The notes: generated by a model not told the origin, from the sequence alone. A stretch of 57,509 nucleotides of DNA from Octopus sinensis (GCF_006345805.1 NW_021833072.1:1-57509); one strand, 5' to 3'. Counted from the first letter of the stretch, positions 6,947 to 39,823 are shown. Translations and numbers: made by a program.

Positions 6947-7258
6947 ATGTTGAAATCATCAGCTATTCACCAGCCGATGGTTTCACCGTTGGAAGAGAAG
7001 ATACATTGGATATTTCATGTTTATATAAAACGAACAATCCTGATTGGTTCAAATTGAAGCGAAACTATACTATCATTGCAGAGATAGAAAACAACGAAAT
7101 CAAAATGCATGATAACGATTTCAGCTGTACTTTAAACCAACTTATCTCGGACTTTGGTGTGGTTAATTGTAGGAAAAAGAACCTCAATTGCCAGGATGTT
7201 GGCTTATACAGTTGTTGGTTAAAAGACGGAGATCATTCCAGTATGAGGTTTCTAAGAG
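6947..7258 (+). CDS. Gene A exon 2: Ig-like domain D1
   Basis: Acceptor catttttactttatag, 312 nt phase 1-1, donor ag|gtcagt conserved in all three paralogs; VEIISYSPADGFTVG...ISC...FSC...VVNCRKKNLNCQDVGLYSC carries the D-x-G-x-Y-x-C Ig F-strand motif. Confidence 0.85.
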
Positions 7259-7393
7259 GTCAGTTCACAAACCACGTCATTAGTCTTCACTATTCAACAT
7301 TATTACTATTATTATTATTATTATTATTATTATTATTATTATTATTATTATTATTATTGTTATTATTATTATTATTTTATTATTATTATTATT

Positions 7394-7944
7394 GAGTGAG
7401 AGAGCAGTGCATGCCATCAAAGTGACACTGGGGTAAAATATACGAAGCCCAGTATACCCATCATGACTACCCGTCTGATAAGGGTACACCAGGCACATGC
7501 ATCACAACCATATGTGCGCGACATGGTGATCTCATATCAAGATAAACAGCACATGACCTTGCAGGTGGGGCCCAGTTAGAATTTTCTTCAGGTTGAGTAG
7601 CCCATCCCGCTCAAAAGGTCCCTGAATAAGGGTTGTTTAAGGATGTTGAAAGAACCACCCATGTTTCCAGAGGTGAATTATTCAAACCCCAAAGAATCCC
7701 TCTCAACACATGGCTATGATGCTCCCCCACTACTTCTGCTCGTGATCAGAGATGCACATATCGTCAGCCACTAAGGGACATGCTCAACTGGTTAAGGTCA
7801 AACAACTGACAAGCAAATCTTTGGTATTGTGCAGAATATTTGCTGTAGCCCATCTTTTATACCAAGACAAAACAATGTACATGATAACACTTCCAATCAG
7901 TTAAGATCAGAAGCCATGAGAGCCACTGCCTGGTACTGCATCAG
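7394..7944 (-). mobile_element. Non-coding ~555-bp element in (TAT)n, copy 1
   Basis: gagtgagagagcagtgcatgcc...gcctggtactgcatcag; near-identical copies at 8603 and 52485, all flanked by TAT repeats; strand inferred from neighbouring LINE polarity. Confidence 0.75.
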
Positions 7945-8529
7945 TATCATTATTATTATTATTATTATTATTATTATTATTATTATTATTATTATTATTG
8001 TTATTATTATCGCAATTATTTTTATTATTATGGTTATTATTATCAGTATTATTATTTTATTATTATTATTATTATTATTATTATTATTATTATTATTATT
8101 ATTATTATAATATTATTATTATTATTATTATTATTGTTATTATTATTATATTATTATTATTGTATTATTATTATTATTATTATTATTATTATTATTATTT
8201 ATTATTATTATTATTATCATTATTATTATATTATTATATTATATTATTATTATTATTATTATAATTATTATTATTATTATCATTATTATTATTATTATAT
8301 TATAATTATTATTTTATTATTATTATTATTATTATTATTATTATTATTATAATTATTGTTATTATCATTATTATTGTTATTATTATATATTATTATTATT
8401 ATTATTATTATTATTATTATTGTTATTATTATTATTATTATTATTATTATTATCATTGTTATTATTATCGCTATTATTATTATTATTATTATTATTATTA
8501 TTATTAAAATTATTATTATTATTATTATT

Positions 8530-8578
8530 CAGTAGTTTTATTTTTATAGTGTGCTTTCACTTCACTACCGAGCGCATA
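8530..8578 (-). mobile_element. ~45-bp 3' terminal remnant of R4/Dong family 3
   Basis: ttttatagtgtgctttcacttcactaccgagcgca matches the 3' end of the 51305-51630 fragment. Confidence 0.6.
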
Positions 8579-8602
8579 TTATATTATAATATTATTATTA
8601 TT

Positions 8603-9158
8603 GAGTGAGAGAGCAGTTCATGCCATCAAAGTGACACTGGGGTAAAATATACGAAGCCCAATATACCCATCATGACTACCCGTCTGATAAAGGTACACCA
8701 GGCACATGCATCACAACCATATGTGCGCGACATGGTGATCTCATATCAAGATAAACAGCACATGACCTTGCAGGTGGGGCCCAGTTAGAATTTTCTTCAG
8801 GTTGAGTAGCCCATCCTGCTCAAACGGTCCCTGAATAAGGGTTGCTTTAGGATGTTGAACGAAACACCTATGTTTCCAGAGGTGAACCATTCAAACTCCA
8901 AAGAATCCCTCTCAACACATGGCCATGATGCTCCCCCACTACTTCTGCTCGTGATCAGAGATGCACATATCGTCAGCCACTAAGGGACATGCTCAACTGG
9001 TTAAGGTCAAACAACTGACAAGCAAATCTGTGGTATTGAGCAGAATATTTGCTGTAGCCCATCTTTTATACCAAGACAAAACAATGTACATGATAACACT
9101 TCCAATCAGTTAAGATCAGAAGCCATGAGAGCCACTGCCTGGTACTGCATCAGGGCAT
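8603..9158 (-). mobile_element. Non-coding ~555-bp element in (TAT)n, copy 2
   Basis: Same termini as copies 1 and 3. Confidence 0.75.
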
Positions 9159-9345
9159 TTATTATTATTATTATTATTATTATTATTATATATTATTATT
9201 ATTATTATTATTATTATTATTATCATTATATTATTATTATTATTATTATTATTATTATTATTATTATTATTATTATCATTATTATTATTATTATAATCAT
9301 TGTTATTATTATTATTATTATTATTATTATTATTATTATTATTAT

Positions 9346-36661: not shown

Positions 36662-38037
36662 TACTCTTTTTACTTGTTTCAGTCATTTGACTGCGGCCAT
36701 GCTGGAGCACCGCCTTTAGTCGAGCAAATCGACCCCGGGACTTATTCTTTTGTAAGCCCAGTACTTATTCTATCGGTTTCTTTTGCCGAACCGCTAGGTG
36801 ACGGAGACGTAAACACACCAGCATCGGTTGTCAAGCAATGCTAGAGGAACAAACACAGACACACAAACACACACACATATACATATATATACATATATAC
36901 GACAGGCTTCTTTCAGTTTCCGTCTACCAAATCCACTCACAAGGCATTGGTCGGCCCGGGGCTATAGGAGAAGACACTTGCCCAAGATGCCACGCAGTGG
37001 GACTGAACCCGGAACCATGTGGTTAGTTAGCAAGCTACTTACCACACAGCCACTCCTGCGACCTGTGAATATACTCTTAGTTTGTTTGACTGAAAGATGA
37101 GGAATGGTTGATCATTTTGTGCAGGAAGACGGAAGACATCACACTCGGAGTGGAACAAAGCAAAGAGAGTGAATAGGGAACAAACTAGAAGATAAGACGA
37201 CAAAAAGAACCGGTATATACTCTGAGTTTACGTAAGCTCTTGAAAGATCCTGTACATACTCAGAGTTTACGTAAGCTCCTGAAAGATCTGGTACATACTC
37301 CTGAGTATGTACAGCTTACTCAGAGTTTACGTAAGCTCCTTGGTAGGCTTAGCAGCATAGCGATGGACACCGTCCGAGAGTCCTTCATTTAAAACAAAGA
37401 TGAAGAAATGAAATACAATAAACGTATGAAATAATGAATAGTGATATAGCTTGTGGGCGTGAGTTCAATTCCTGGGTTAGTCAAGCTTGTATAACGTTTC
37501 TAGTTAAAGCTTTGTGAACAACACCAAAATTAATAAAGAGCCTAATTAATAATGAAAAAATCCCTGACCCACGTGGAGGACAGAACGAGGATGATCTAAC
37601 CCCATAGACTAAATAAAGGCGCAGGAGTGGCTGTGTGGTAAGTAGCTTGTTACCAACCAATGGTTCCGGGTTCAGTCCCACTGCGTGGCACCTTGGGCAA
37701 GTGTCTTCTACTATAGCCTCAGGACGACCAAAGCCTTGTGAGTGGATTTGGTAGACGGAAAATGGAAGAAGCCGTCGTTATATATGTATATGTATATATA
37801 TATATATGTTGTGTGTGTGTTGGTGTCTGTGTTTTGTCCCCCTAGCATTGCTTGACAACCGACGCTGGTGTGTTTATGTCCACGTCACTTAGCGGTTCAG
37901 CAAAAAGAGACCGATAGAATAAGTACTGGGCTTACAAAGAATAAATCCCGGGGTCGAGTTGTTCGATTAAGGGCGGTACTCCAGCATGGCCGCAGTCAAA
38001 TGACTGAAACAAGTAAAAGAGTAAAAGAGTAAAGAGT
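36662..38037. mobile_element. Two SINE family B copies in opposite orientation (36662-37061 minus; 37618-38037 plus)
   Basis: Full head-body-tail structure in each. Confidence 0.85.
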
Positions 38038-38381
38038 ACGTTACCATATTCTGGAAACATTACCTAATTGGTGAGGCACCTGAGGATGACAGGAGAATAC
38101 AACAGCCGAAATATTGTGGTTATAACAAGCAAGATGAGGAGGATGTTAGTTCAAATATGTACAAAACAATGGTAATTCTTGGTCTCAGAAATTCAAACAA
38201 AATTCTTTCTCGTTTGCTATGCTGCAATTAACTTTTCTTTCTTCTTTTCCATCGCCCTCTTTCTTCTCTTCTTTTTTAATCTGTCTTTTCCCCCTTCTTC
38301 TTTCTCTTCTACCATTTCTTTTTCTACATCTATATGTAACTTTTAATAAATTTTCCCTCTTCCATTTTTTTTCCTTTATAG

Positions 38382-38711
38382 TTGTACAAATTGCCAGCTT
38401 CTCACCCGCTGATGGTTTCACTATTGGAGTACCAAATATGATGAACATTGTATGTTCATATACAACGACGAATCTAACTTCGTTCAGCCTCGTACAAAAC
38501 AACAATTCCGTCGTAGAGATGCAATACAACCAAAACTCTGGGTTCTTTCAAACTATAAGGAATGAGAAAGCTTTCGTCTGTACTTTGACCCAATTTTCAT
38601 CGAATTCTGGTGTGGTTAAGTGTTTCAAACGGAACCTCAATTGCGAGGATGTGGGAGAATACAGATGTCTTTTATCAGAAACAGATATTTCCAATCCAGA
38701 GATTCTGAAAG
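38382..38711 (+). CDS. Gene B exon 2: Ig-like domain D1
   Basis: Acceptor ttttcctttatag, 330 nt phase 1-1, donor ag|gtcagt; VQIASFSPADGFTIG...IVC...FVC...VVKCFKRNLNCEDVGEYRC. Confidence 0.85.
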
Positions 38712-38769
38712 GTCAGTACATCACCCACGTCGTTAGTATTCACTATTCAACATTATTACTTTTTCGAAC

Positions 38770-39180
38770 TAAGGCGGCGAGAGCTGGCAGAATCGTTAAC
38801 ACGACGGGCGAAATGCTTAGCGGTATTTCGTCTGCCGCTACGTTTTGAGTTCAAATTCCGCCAAGGTCGACTTTGCCTTTCATCCTTTCGGGGGTCGAAA
38901 TAATTAAGTACTAGTTACGCACTGCTGGGTCGATGTAATCGAACTAATCCCTTTGTCTGTCCTTGTTTGTCCCTCCTCTGTGTTTAGCCCCTTGTGGGTA
39001 GTAAAGAAATAGGTATTTCGTCTGCCACTACGTTTTGAGTTCAAATTCCGCCGAGGTCGACTTTGCCTTTCATCCTTTCGGGATCGATGAATTAAGTACC
39101 CGTTATGCACTGGTATAATCGACTTTGTCTGTCCTTGTTTGTCCCCTCTGTGTGTAGCCCCTTGTGGGTAGTATAGAAAT
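38770..39180 (+). mobile_element. SINE family C, two tandem units
   Basis: Head ggcggcgagagctggcag plus two body units. Confidence 0.8.
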
Positions 39181-39505
39181 ATATATGCATGTATTAATAT
39201 TTGTATGTATGTATGCATATGCATGTATGTGTGTATGTGTGTGTATATGTATGTATGTATACGTGTGCGTATATTTCTATGTATGTATACTTAGGTCTTT
39301 ATGCAGGTAGTGTCGCCATGTAAACTGTGCTCACCCTGCTCTAGCACTTCTTTATAAAATAGAAAGTGAAACCTTGAAATAGCATCTTAAGTTTCAGAAA
39401 TGTTCTTCATTTAAATTTTTGCATCAACACTCCAAGTTTGTACCAAAGCATCCCCCGAATATGTTATTGTGAAATTATTCTTCCAACGATTATTTTATTT
39501 TTCAG

Positions 39506-39823
39506 TGAAACCTTCCATTAAGAGTTTCGTACTTGCCGAGAATGACTTTCAAATGAGCAGGATGGCTACATTCAAGTGCACAGCAAATGTACCATGGCCT
39601 AATCCATGGGAAGAAGTCGTCTTTCGATGGACATTAATACGCAACGGAAGGAACGTTGTGACTGAAGATAGAGCGAGAGTTTGGGGTTCTGACAAATGTT
39701 ATACTGAAGTAACTTCATCCTATAAACACGTTGTACATTTTGATAGCTTCTCTTCCCATTCAATCATTTCTTGTACAGTATTTAACCAGACACGTACTAG
39801 GAACATCGACCCCCCTATGCCAA
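39506..39823 (+). CDS. Gene B exon 3: Ig-like domain D2
   Basis: Acceptor ttatttttcag, 318 nt phase 1-1, donor a|gtaagc; VKPSIKSF...FKCTANV...VVFRW...DKCYTEVTSS...SCTVFNQT. Confidence 0.88.

What the first reader, a model, noticed from the sequence alone, without database searches (positions are those of the whole stretch)
6947..39823. Membrane-distal D1 is far more divergent than D2, and D2 changes are mostly amino-acid altering
Hand alignment of A versus B gives D1 ~43% aa identity (45/104, plus a 6-aa indel) and D2 ~77% (67/87). Within D2, 20 codons differ non-synonymously and only 4 synonymously, clustered in YVQYDDFTQRSTV versus VVHFDSFSSHSII, while the adjacent intron segment (17940-18040 versus 39257-39357) is ~96% identical. 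Coding DNA diverging faster than flanking intron suggests diversifying selection, as in ligand-binding or immune receptors. Caveat: relaxed constraint on gene A exon 3 after its acceptor loss, or conversion of D2, could contribute.
Basis: partly seen in the sequence, partly recalled or inferred. Interest (0 to 1): 0.72.

Follow-up and report, generated by a model that had tools for sequence, protein, structure and literature searches.

The report
Octopus Ig-receptor paralogues patched by gene conversion
Two neighbouring octopus genes for small two-domain immunoglobulin-like surface proteins look unevenly diverged mainly because a roughly 0.5-kb stretch of one gene was copied over the other, not because the inner domain is under diversifying selection; the outer domain does show a separate signal of fast adaptive change.

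Summary
The inference drawn from D2 does not hold.

- **D2 selection:** dN/dS for D2 is 1.57 but does not differ from 1 (P 0.49).
- **Mosaic history:** Orthologues from O. vulgaris and O. bimaculoides show that D2 is a mosaic. The end of intron 2 and the first two-thirds of the D2 exon group by species. This is a B-to-A gene-conversion patch, 94-95% identical between A and B.
- **Breakpoint:** From a sharp breakpoint (B 39727-39740 = A 18209-18222; permutation P ≤ 1e-5) onwards, sequences group by paralogue. The YVQYDDFTQRSTV / VVHFDSFSSHSII cluster starts exactly there. It is old paralogue-specific sequence also present in O. bimaculoides.
- **Site models on D2:** They look "significant" with a single tree and lose significance once D2 is partitioned at the breakpoint.
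- **D1:** It lies outside the patch. Its silent divergence is 5 times that of D2, so age explains most of the D1/D2 contrast. D1 does carry a robust site-model signal of positive selection (LRT 26.4).
- **Acceptor loss:** The loss in gene A is specific to O. sinensis and recent.
- **Family:** It is an uncharacterised, octopod-only V-C2 Ig family.

The parts
2441..2561 (+). Gene A exon 1 (signal peptide MMSSGYLTVAEG...YTSA)
   Evidence: tblastn of P0002 and P0004; sequence and donor GT read directly
6947..7258 (+). Gene A exon 2 = D1 (membrane-distal V-like Ig domain). It is a phase 1-1 exon and carries an O. sinensis-specific 18-nt in-frame deletion relative to O. vulgaris A.
   Evidence: Splice sites; alignment with O. 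vulgaris A
17940..18041 (+). Intron-2 piece of A that is 95% identical to B 39257-39358. It is the 5' part of the gene-conversion patch, bounded upstream by the (TATG)n microsatellite.
18043..18305 (+). Gene A D2 remnant, 87 codons. It lacks the acceptor and the first 18 codons because of a roughly 202-nt deletion (B coordinates 39359-39560).
   Evidence: The deletion is absent from O. vulgaris A, from both B genes and from both O. bimaculoides genes.
18209..18222 (+). 3' breakpoint of the conversion patch in A coordinates (B 39727-39740), at codons KH|YV. The YVQYDDFTQRSTV cluster begins here.
   Evidence: Informative-site map and maximum chi-square test; tree likelihoods
19168..19262 (+). 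Gene A last exon (IASSAPSGIAYTKCILVVNLILLLLVAAISR*). It encodes a hydrophobic C-terminus resembling a GPI-anchor signal.
29925..30045 (+). Gene B exon 1 (signal peptide)
38382..38711 (+). Gene B exon 2 = D1
   Evidence: 97% aa identical to O. vulgaris P0001
39257..39727 (+). Conversion patch in B coordinates: the 3' end of intron 2 plus the first two-thirds of the D2 exon. 33 of 35 by-species informative sites lie here.
39506..39823 (+). Gene B exon 3 = D2 (C2-like Ig domain), complete with acceptor and donor
41619..41715 (+). Gene B last exon. A 1-nt deletion relative to its orthologues puts the hydrophobic C-terminus out of frame in this assembly.
49883..50200 (-). Gene C (third paralogue, convergent with B) D2 exon, used as outgroup
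53592..53927 (-). Gene C D1 exon
49006..49100 (-). Gene C last exon (VRCNTGSVTQFSKWVLVINLIILLLAVAISR*)

Best explanation
The window is an Octopus sinensis scaffold. It carries three tandem members (A, B and C) of an octopod-specific family of small surface proteins. Each has a signal peptide, a V-like Ig domain (D1), a C2-like Ig domain (D2) and a short hydrophobic C-terminus that resembles a GPI-anchor signal. A and B are old paralogues that split before O. sinensis and O. bimaculoides diverged. In the common ancestor of O. sinensis and O. vulgaris, a non-reciprocal gene-conversion patch of at least about 470 bp overwrote part of A with B-type sequence. The patch covered the 3' end of intron 2 and the first two-thirds of the D2 exon. 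An independent, shorter patch homogenised the same region in O. bimaculoides. The cluster of amino-acid differences in D2 begins at the 3' edge of the patch. It is unconverted, ancient paralogue-specific sequence, shared between A and its O. bimaculoides orthologue and between B and its orthologue. D1, its flanking introns and the last exon were not converted, so they keep the old divergence. That explains most of the D1-versus-D2 contrast. Separately, D1 evolves with omega above 1 at roughly half of its codons, namely the outward-facing positions of both beta sheets, while framework residues are conserved and the reading frames are kept open. This points to diversifying selection on the membrane-distal domain of a functional receptor-like family. 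The patch, the breakpoint and the orthology are shown by the data. The direction B to A, the GPI anchoring and the adaptive reading of D1 are inferred.
For: Orthology and age of the split: in the D1 region, including introns, 44 informative sites group A with bim4 and B with bim3, against 3 that group by species and 6 other. The by-type tree is better by 49 lnL. Collinear non-coding matches link A to L002 and B plus C to L003. Mosaic: in the D2 region, 33 of 35 by-species sites lie upstream of B 39727 and all 17 by-type sites lie downstream of 39740. Maximum chi-square is 43.9 with permutation P <= 1e-5. Segment identities: in exon 39561-39733, A-B is 94%, A-bim4 74% and B-bim3 81%. In exon 39734-39823, A-B is 77% and A-bim4 93%. 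In the first 66 nt of intron 3, A-B is 73% and A-bim4 94%. Codon likelihoods: for the 5' part the species tree gives -873.2 against -927.8 for the type tree. For the 3' part the type tree gives -421.7 against -450.3 for the species tree. Direction: within the patch both A and B are closer to bim3 (81-82%) than to bim4 (74%). No selection signal in D2: NG86 omega is 1.57 with P 0.49. Partitioned M2a-M1a LRTs are 1.9 and 4.0. History behind D1 > D2: dS is 0.46 versus 0.09, and D1's flanking introns are 77-82% identical between A and B. D1 selection: M2a-M1a LRT is 26.4. It is 22.2-22.6 with other codon frequencies and 14.6 and 12.5 in the two halves. It is 21.9 without C and 23.1 without A. Optima are stable across starting points. 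The largest LRT in 21 null simulations is 9.2. Replacement divergence exceeds non-coding divergence: 23% versus 11.4% (P 4e-7) and 16.7% versus 9.9% (P 9e-4). Selected sites alternate along strands. Genes are functional rather than decaying: neutral simulation gives P(no stop) of 0.05 at 10% divergence. There are about 40 gap openings per 1.6 kb of intergenic DNA between sinB and bim3, whereas the aligned coding sequences differ only by in-frame indels. Fold: the AF2 model has pLDDT 81.5, two beta sandwiches and a C-terminal helix. Top Foldseek hits are Fab chains, butyrophilins and B7-H6.
Against: Only one genome per species was available and there are no polymorphism data. The 5' edge of the patch is hidden in microsatellite and satellite DNA. 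The codon-model code is my own (GY94, checked only by null simulation), and the sample amounts to 5 effectively independent lineages. Multinucleotide changes and micro-conversions from unsampled paralogues are visible: AAATTG versus ACTTTC in D1, and 10 changes within 50 nt of A's last exon between sister species. Such events can inflate site-model LRTs (PMC6332903). NG86 omega for D1 is only 0.9-1.2, and M0 omega is 1.4-1.6 with P 0.04-0.07. Alignable non-coding DNA probably underestimates the neutral rate, since dS is 0.19-0.30. Gene A is partly decayed in O. sinensis and B has a frameshift in its last exon in this assembly, so the O. sinensis copies themselves may not all be functional. The selected D1 sites are spread over both sheets rather than forming one patch.
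Confidence: 0.8

Rival explanations
1. Diversifying selection acts on D2. Under the first reader's reading, the E-strand / E-F loop cluster is a ligand-contact patch driven apart in A and B faster than neutral intron DNA.
For: There are 20 replacement versus 4 silent codons. Beyond the patch omega is 2.2 in O. sinensis and 1.9 in O. vulgaris. Single-tree M2a-M1a LRTs are 14-22.
Against: None of the pairwise omega values differs from 1 (P 0.26-0.49). The single-tree LRTs fall to 1.9 and 4.0 when each part gets its supported tree. The intron yardstick lies inside a conversion patch, and intron 3 just past the cluster is as diverged between A and B (73%) as the cluster itself (77%). The cluster is retained between species within each paralogue type: A-bim4 is 93% nt identical there.
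Confidence: 0.1
2. Constraint was relaxed on gene A's D2 after it lost its splice acceptor. On this view the exon is dead and drifting, which produces the replacement-rich differences.
For: The O. sinensis A copy lacks the acceptor and the first 18 codons. The only in-frame cryptic AG (18064-65) would remove the B-strand cysteine (sequence read directly). The O. vulgaris annotation of A skips D2 (P0008). O. vulgaris A has replacements at otherwise conserved D2 positions (N to I in LAENDF; Y to D in VQYDD).
Against: The deletion is absent from O. vulgaris A, so it is younger than the roughly 1.5% sinensis/vulgaris split. Only 9 of the D2 differences arose between sinA and vulA. All 17 by-type sites in the cluster region are shared with the intact O. 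bimaculoides orthologue, so they predate any decay.
Confidence: 0.07
3. The pattern is an assembly artefact. On this view the 57.5-kb unplaced scaffold is a collapsed or chimeric assembly of paralogous copies, and this creates the apparent mosaic.
For: The A-B spacing is 10 kb here but about 50 kb in O. vulgaris. Collinearity with O. vulgaris breaks between roughly W 19400 and 24400. B's last exon has a 1-nt homopolymer-type deletion.
Against: The independent chromosome-level O. vulgaris assembly shows the same mosaic in its A and B genes: vulA-vulB is 94% identical in the patch, 71% beyond it and 71% in the first 66 nt of intron 3. All A and B exons match their O. vulgaris orthologues at 89-99% identity (A's 95-nt last exon is the lowest, 85/95 nt, the others are 96-99%).
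Confidence: 0.03

Closest known systems
CEACAM (CEA) gene family of vertebrates
   Same: Both are tandem clusters of small IgSF surface proteins with an N-terminal V-like domain followed by C2-like domain(s), and several CEACAM members are GPI-anchored. Both are fast-evolving and species-specific. In CEACAMs the N-domain is under positive selection and gene conversion or domain shuffling occurs between paralogues (PMC8860441, PMC7042247; architecture from general knowledge).
   Different: No sequence relationship was detected. Pfam gives no significant hit, and the nearest structural matches have 11-18% identity. In CEACAMs it is typically the N-domain that is converted or shuffled. Here D1 escapes conversion and the 5' part of D2 plus its intron is homogenised. 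D1 here keeps the canonical cysteine pair. No ligand or pathogen link is known.
CD2/SLAM-family V-C2 proteins (CD48, CD58) and B7/butyrophilin V-C ectodomains
   Same: These share the two-domain V-then-C ectodomain. CD48 and one CD58 isoform are GPI-anchored (general knowledge). Butyrophilins and B7-H6 are among the best Foldseek matches, with TM-score 0.43-0.46 on the query.
   Different: The resemblance is of fold only (12-16% identity). The octopus proteins have extra conserved cysteines (C106, C120, C127 and C214 in P0001). There is no B30.2 domain or cytoplasmic tail. The family is restricted to octopods.
Concerted evolution / mosaic gene conversion in tandem receptor families (KIR, LILR, MHC class I)
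   Same: They show the same signature: introns and parts of exons group by species while other parts group by orthology, with sharp breakpoints. Single-tree dN/dS tests are misled by recombination.
   Different: This is a different protein family and phylum. Only one short patch per lineage was resolved here.
Molluscan FREPs (fibrinogen-related proteins with IgSF domains)
   Same: They are the other known mollusc IgSF family proposed to diversify for immune recognition (general knowledge).
   Different: FREPs carry a C-terminal fibrinogen domain and are secreted lectins. The octopus proteins have no fibrinogen domain and end in a membrane-anchor-like segment.

Membership tests
Immunoglobulin superfamily (two Ig-like domains, V-like then C2-like) | Beta-sandwich fold with a B-strand Cys, a C-strand Trp and an F-strand Y-x-C | tested here: met
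   The AF2 model (pLDDT 81.5) shows a 9-strand domain and a 7-strand domain. More than 1000 PDB hits with E <= 1e-3 were found, and the 50 best listed are Ig-fold proteins: Fab chains, a T-cell receptor, butyrophilins and B7-H6. C64/C135, C174/C239 and W191 are invariant in 18 family members.
Immunoglobulin superfamily (two Ig-like domains, V-like then C2-like) | Significant match to a curated Ig domain profile (Pfam ig, Ig_2, V-set, C2-set) | tested here: not met
   The best match is Ig_2 at E 0.017, 15.8 bits against a cut-off of 27. The family is too divergent for sequence profiles, so membership rests on the fold.
GPI-anchored surface proteins | C-terminal signal: small omega-site residues, a short polar spacer and a terminal hydrophobic stretch with no cytoplasmic tail | tested here: inconclusive
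   The C-termini (...SADASSGIQYYKWVLVANLILVLLVVTISH and ...SSAPSGIAYTKCILVVNLILLLLVAAISR) fit the pattern by eye. No GPI predictor or assay was available. A tail-less transmembrane helix is equally possible, and AF2 predicts a helix at 263-286.
Genes under diversifying (positive) selection | dN/dS significantly above 1 at a class of sites on a recombination-free partition | tested here: met
   D1: M2a versus M1a LRT is 26.4, with 63% of sites at omega 2.9. The result is robust, and the null simulation maximum is 9.2. Caveats are the small sample, my own code and multinucleotide changes.
   NG86 omega is 1.57 with P 0.49. Partitioned LRTs are 1.9 (P 0.38) and 4.0 (P 0.135).
Interlocus gene conversion (concerted evolution) | Phylogenetic incongruence between adjacent segments with a localised breakpoint, flanked on both sides by orthology-consistent sequence | tested here: met
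   The site pattern is SSSS...TTTT, with maximum chi-square 43.9 and P <= 1e-5. Tree likelihoods flip by 54 and 29 lnL units. D1 and its introns upstream, and the D2 3' part, intron 3 and last exon downstream, all group by type.
Processed or unitary pseudogene (for gene A in O. sinensis) | Disabling lesion plus neutral evolution | tested here: inconclusive
   The D2 acceptor and 18 codons are deleted. However exon 1, D1 and the last exon remain open and in phase, so skipping D2 keeps the reading frame. A D1-only orthologue is annotated in O. vulgaris (P0008). sinA-vulA exon divergence is 3.4-10%, against 1-2% in unique flanks.

The most novel reading that the evidence does not exclude
An undescribed, octopod-restricted family of tandemly clustered V-C2 surface proteins with GPI-like C-termini behaves like vertebrate pathogen-facing or self-recognition receptors such as CEACAM or KIR. 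On this reading the membrane-distal domain is under diversifying selection over its whole exposed surface. Recurrent short gene conversions near a (TATG)n microsatellite homogenise the stalk-proximal domain but spare D1. Individual copies are being remodelled: D2 exon loss yields one-domain forms, and chimeric A-D1/B-D2 transcripts are modelled. This would be a cephalopod candidate for a diversified innate recognition system.
Probability: 0.35. Interest if true: 0.65.

Novelty: new member of a known kind. Interest (0 to 1): 0.45.

Why it matters
For the scan, the case shows that an exon diverging faster than its flanking intron between tandem paralogues can be produced entirely by a conversion-patch edge. 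Here single-tree dN/dS site tests gave false positives of LRT 14-24. These disappeared once the breakpoint was respected. For biology, cephalopods have no described diversified immune or recognition receptor family. An octopod-only IgSF cluster combines a positively selected distal domain, frequent paralogue exchange and rapid gene remodelling. That makes it a concrete candidate to test in haemocytes, epithelia, suckers or gametes.

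Tried and rejected
- **Pfam scan of five family members:** there was no hit above threshold, so domain identity had to come from structure prediction.
- **Literature searches:** searches for the six LOC identifiers and for octopus IgSF selection found nothing on this family.
- **Acceptor loss as the cause of the D2 pattern:** rejected, because O. vulgaris A keeps the acceptor and the full exon.
- **The 100-nt intron piece as a constrained element:** rejected. Its cross-species identity (84-85%) is no higher than that of the alignable non-coding DNA (88.6-90.1%).
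- **Single unequal crossover instead of conversion:** rejected, because by-type sequence flanks the patch on both sides.
- **Excess divergence of A exons between O. sinensis and O. vulgaris as proof of selection:** D1 versus all non-coding DNA was not significant (P 0.15-0.5). Against unique flanks it is suggestive, but the differences include clustered multinucleotide changes.
- **Locating the O. bimaculoides and O. vulgaris gene C D1 in the fetched loci:** neither lay within the 10-kb flanks.
- **3D surface mapping of selected sites:** model coordinates are not exposed by the tool, so only a strand-by-strand 1D mapping was done.

Full report
**What is in the window**

The sequence is eukaryotic and repeat-rich. 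A protein search with B's D1+D2 returned four Octopus proteins. One of them, O. sinensis LOC115229977 isoform X2 (P0002), sits on a contig of exactly 57,509 bp, so the window is an O. sinensis scaffold.

Three paralogous genes are present:
- **Gene A (+ strand):** exon 1 at 2441-2561, D1 at 6947-7258, a D2 remnant at 18043-18305, and the last exon at 19168-19262.
- **Gene B (+ strand):** exon 1 at 29925-30045, D1 at 38382-38711, D2 at 39506-39823, and the last exon at 41619-41715.
- **Gene C (- strand):** D1 at 53592-53927, D2 at 49883-50200, and the last exon at 49006-49100.

The Ig exons are phase 1-1 with canonical AG/GT sites. P0002 is a chimeric model that joins A exon 1 and A D1 to B D2.

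**Checking the observation**

- D1 has 45 of 103 aligned residues identical, plus a 6-codon gap.
- D2 has 67 of 87 residues identical.
- 20 codons differ by replacement and 4 by silent change only.
- The intron piece is 96/101 identical.

The replacement excess is not statistically distinguishable from neutrality. Nd is 27 over 204 sites and Sd is 5 over 57 sites, giving omega 1.57 with Fisher P 0.49.

**Bringing in orthologues**

Four loci were fetched with the look-up of encoding contigs:
- O. vulgaris B (L001, protein P0001, 98% identical to B).
- O. vulgaris A (L004, protein P0008).
- O. bimaculoides LOC106878948 (L002, called bim4 here).
- O. bimaculoides LOC106882738 (L003, called bim3 here).

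Collinear non-coding matches show that bim4 is the positional orthologue of A. They also show that bim3, together with a convergent C-like gene, is the orthologue of B plus C.

In the D1 exon and its flanking introns, 44 informative sites group A with bim4 and B with bim3. Only 3 group by species and 6 show the third pattern. The A/B duplication therefore predates the split between O. sinensis and O. bimaculoides.

**The D2 mosaic**

In a six-sequence alignment of D2 with its flanks, 33 of 35 by-species sites lie upstream of B 39727. Every one of the 17 by-type sites lies downstream of B 39740. The maximum chi-square is 43.9, and none of 100,000 permutations reached it.

Identities by segment:

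| Segment | A-B | A-bim4 | B-bim3 |
|---|---|---|---|
| Intron piece 39257-39358 | 95% | 85% | 84% |
| Exon 39561-39733 | 94% | 74% | 81% |
| Exon 39734-39823 | 77% | 93% | 84% |
| First 66 nt of intron 3 | 73% | 94% | 81% |

O. vulgaris A and B show the same pattern, so the event predates the sinensis/vulgaris split. Within the patch, both A and B are nearer to bim3 than to bim4, which implies copying from B to A.

In O. bimaculoides the two paralogues are 97-98% identical from the intron to about B 39560. That is an independent, shorter patch at the same place.

By-type sequence flanks the patch on both sides: D1 and the start of intron 2 upstream, and the D2 3' part, intron 3 and the last exon downstream. 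This makes it a conversion patch rather than a single crossover. Its 5' edge is lost in (TATG)n and 184-bp satellite DNA.

The YVQYDDFTQRSTV / VVHFDSFSSHSII cluster starts at the 3' edge of the patch. Its counterparts in O. bimaculoides are NVQYDDFTHRSAV in bim4 and AVRFDSFASPSII in bim3. The cluster is therefore old paralogue-specific sequence.

**Codon models**

I wrote a GY94 maximum-likelihood implementation with models M0, M1a and M2a.

Results for D2:
- For the 5' part, the species tree beats the type tree by 54.5 lnL units.
- For the 3' part, the type tree wins by 28.5 lnL units.
- With one tree for the whole exon, M2a-M1a looks significant (LRT 14.3 or 21.8).
- With the wrong tree on a part, the LRT is 9.8 or 23.9.
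- With the supported tree on each part, the LRTs are 1.9 (P 0.38) and 4.0 (P 0.135), and M0 omega is about 1.

The apparent selection on D2 is a recombination artefact.

**Why D1 is more diverged**

D1 has dS 0.46 against 0.09 for D2. Its flanking introns are 77-82% identical between A and B. The unconverted D2 tail is 77% identical in nucleotides and 55% in amino acids, which is nearly as diverged as D1 (67% and 44%). Most of the contrast between the domains is therefore history: two-thirds of D2 was recently overwritten.

**A real signal in D1**

On the strongly supported by-type tree, the D1 results are as follows.
- M0 omega is 1.39 (P 0.07 against 1), and 1.58 without gene C (P 0.036).
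- M2a beats M1a with LRT 26.4 (P 2e-6). In that fit 63% of codons have omega 2.9 and 36% have omega 0.25.
- With F1x4 and equal codon frequencies the LRTs are 22.6 and 22.2.
- In the two halves of the exon the LRTs are 14.6 and 12.5.
- Without gene A the LRT is 23.1.
- The optima are stable from several starting points.
- The largest LRT in 21 simulations under M1a is 9.2.

Replacement divergence in D1 also exceeds alignable non-coding divergence in both orthologue pairs. For sinA-bim4 it is 23% against 11.4% (P 4e-7). For sinB-bim3 it is 16.7% against 9.9% (P 9e-4).

Selected sites alternate along the predicted beta strands and occur on both sheets. This matches the exposed surface in general, not one patch.

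The genes are not simply decaying. Neutral simulation gives a 5% chance of keeping the ORF free of stops at 10% divergence. Intergenic DNA between sinB and bim3 carries about 40 gap openings per 1.6 kb, while the aligned coding sequences differ only by in-frame indels.

Several caveats apply to the D1 result:
- The sample is small.
- The code is my own.
- Multinucleotide changes and possible micro-conversions from unsampled paralogues are visible. Such events can inflate these tests (PMC6332903).
- NG86 omega for D1 is only about 1.

**State of gene A**

The roughly 202-nt deletion that removed the D2 acceptor and 18 codons is absent from O. vulgaris A. That gene keeps an open, splice-competent D2 exon (L004 18747-19064) but has a different deletion of about 135 nt in the intron. 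The acceptor loss is therefore recent and cannot explain the cluster.

The O. vulgaris annotation nevertheless skips D2, giving P0008 of 181 aa with D1 joined to the anchor exon. Skipping keeps the reading frame in O. sinensis too.

Between the sister species, A's exons differ by 3.4-10%, against 1-2% in unique flanks. B's exons differ by 1.2% against 1.5% for B's non-coding DNA.

**What the family is**

An exhaustive profile search found 41 representative proteins. The ten whose sources were looked up all come from octopods (O. vulgaris, O. sinensis, O. bimaculoides, Argonauta hians), and every source name is "uncharacterized" or "hypothetical".

Pfam gives no significant hit. An AF2 model of P0001 (pLDDT 81.5) shows a 9-strand domain, a 7-strand domain and a C-terminal helix. 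The nearest PDB folds are Fab chains, butyrophilins and B7-H6.

The C-terminus looks like a GPI-anchor signal, but this is an inference. Some distant family members have a true transmembrane segment and a cytoplasmic tail (P0015).

The closest analogue in behaviour is the vertebrate CEACAM family, which combines positive selection on the N-domain with gene conversion between paralogues (PMC8860441, PMC7042247). There is no detectable sequence relationship to it.

**Verdict**

- The D2-based inference of diversifying selection is replaced by a gene-conversion mosaic (confidence about 0.8).
- A separate, moderately supported signal of diversifying selection exists in D1 (confidence about 0.6).
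- The phenomenon is of a well-known kind, occurring in a previously undescribed octopod gene family.

Noticed in passing
window 41619-41715: Gene B's last exon has a 1-nt deletion (AGGAATC in O. vulgaris and O. bimaculoides versus GGGATC here). This shifts the hydrophobic C-terminus out of frame. The NCBI model reads through to a donor at 41746 and a further exon. It may be a real frameshift or a homopolymer assembly error.
   Followed up: partly
window 2441-7258 joined to 39506-41746: NCBI LOC115229977 isoform X2 (P0002) is a chimera of gene A (exon 1 and D1) and gene B (D2 and last exon). It is spliced across about 32 kb and skips A's broken D2 as well as B's exon 1 and D1.
   Followed up: partly
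L004 18747-19064 (O. vulgaris A) and window 18043-18305: O. vulgaris A retains an open D2 exon with acceptor and donor, yet its annotation (P0008, 181 aa) skips it. It also has its own deletion of about 135 nt in the intron next to the (TATG)n microsatellite. The two sister species therefore carry different deletions at the same spot.
   Followed up: partly
window 19168-19262 vs L004 22684-22778: A's last exon differs from O. vulgaris A at 10 positions within about 50 nt, in the juxtamembrane / putative omega-site region, including the conserved W changed to C. There are no differences in the surrounding 150 nt. Changes fall on both lineages, which could reflect micro-conversion from another paralogue or strong selection.
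   Followed up: partly
window 19400-24400: Collinearity with O. vulgaris A ends near 19421-20296 and collinearity with O. vulgaris B starts at 24404. A and B are 10 kb apart here, about 50 kb apart in O. vulgaris and about 560 kb apart in O. bimaculoides, where another family member follows the A orthologue. This suggests a deletion or mis-join in this scaffold, or insertions in the other species.
   Followed up: no
window 3927-5878, 6105-6637 (inverted), 27162-27713, 38770-39181, 41058-41541, 49258-49707: A 184-bp satellite is present as 10 tandem copies in A's intron 1 and is scattered in introns of B and near C. It is also tandem in the O. vulgaris locus. It lies immediately upstream of the conversion patch in B.
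   Followed up: no
window 17373-17960 and 39164-39257; 7300-7500: Long (TATG)n/(TGTA)n microsatellites abut the 5' side of the conversion patch in both genes, and (TTA)n follows the D1 donor. They coincide with the deletions and with the patch edge.
   Followed up: no
window 48969-53927 (- strand): A third paralogue, gene C, appears intact in the three exons located (D1, D2, last exon), and its exon 1 was not located. Its D2 is 81% identical in amino acids to the O. bimaculoides counterpart. That is clearly more conserved than the A or B orthologue pairs (61-70%).
   Followed up: partly
window 1170-1543, 19561-19945, 23328-23712, 24491-24863, 31740-32114: A dispersed repeat of about 375 bp, probably a SINE-like element, occurs in five copies that are 91-98% identical. 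Copies are also present in the O. vulgaris and O. bimaculoides loci.
   Followed up: no
P0001 residues C106, C120, C127, C214 (window B D1/D2): Beyond the canonical intradomain cysteine pairs, four further cysteines are invariant in 18 family members. There is an odd number in each domain, which suggests an extra D1 disulfide and possibly an interdomain one.
   Followed up: no
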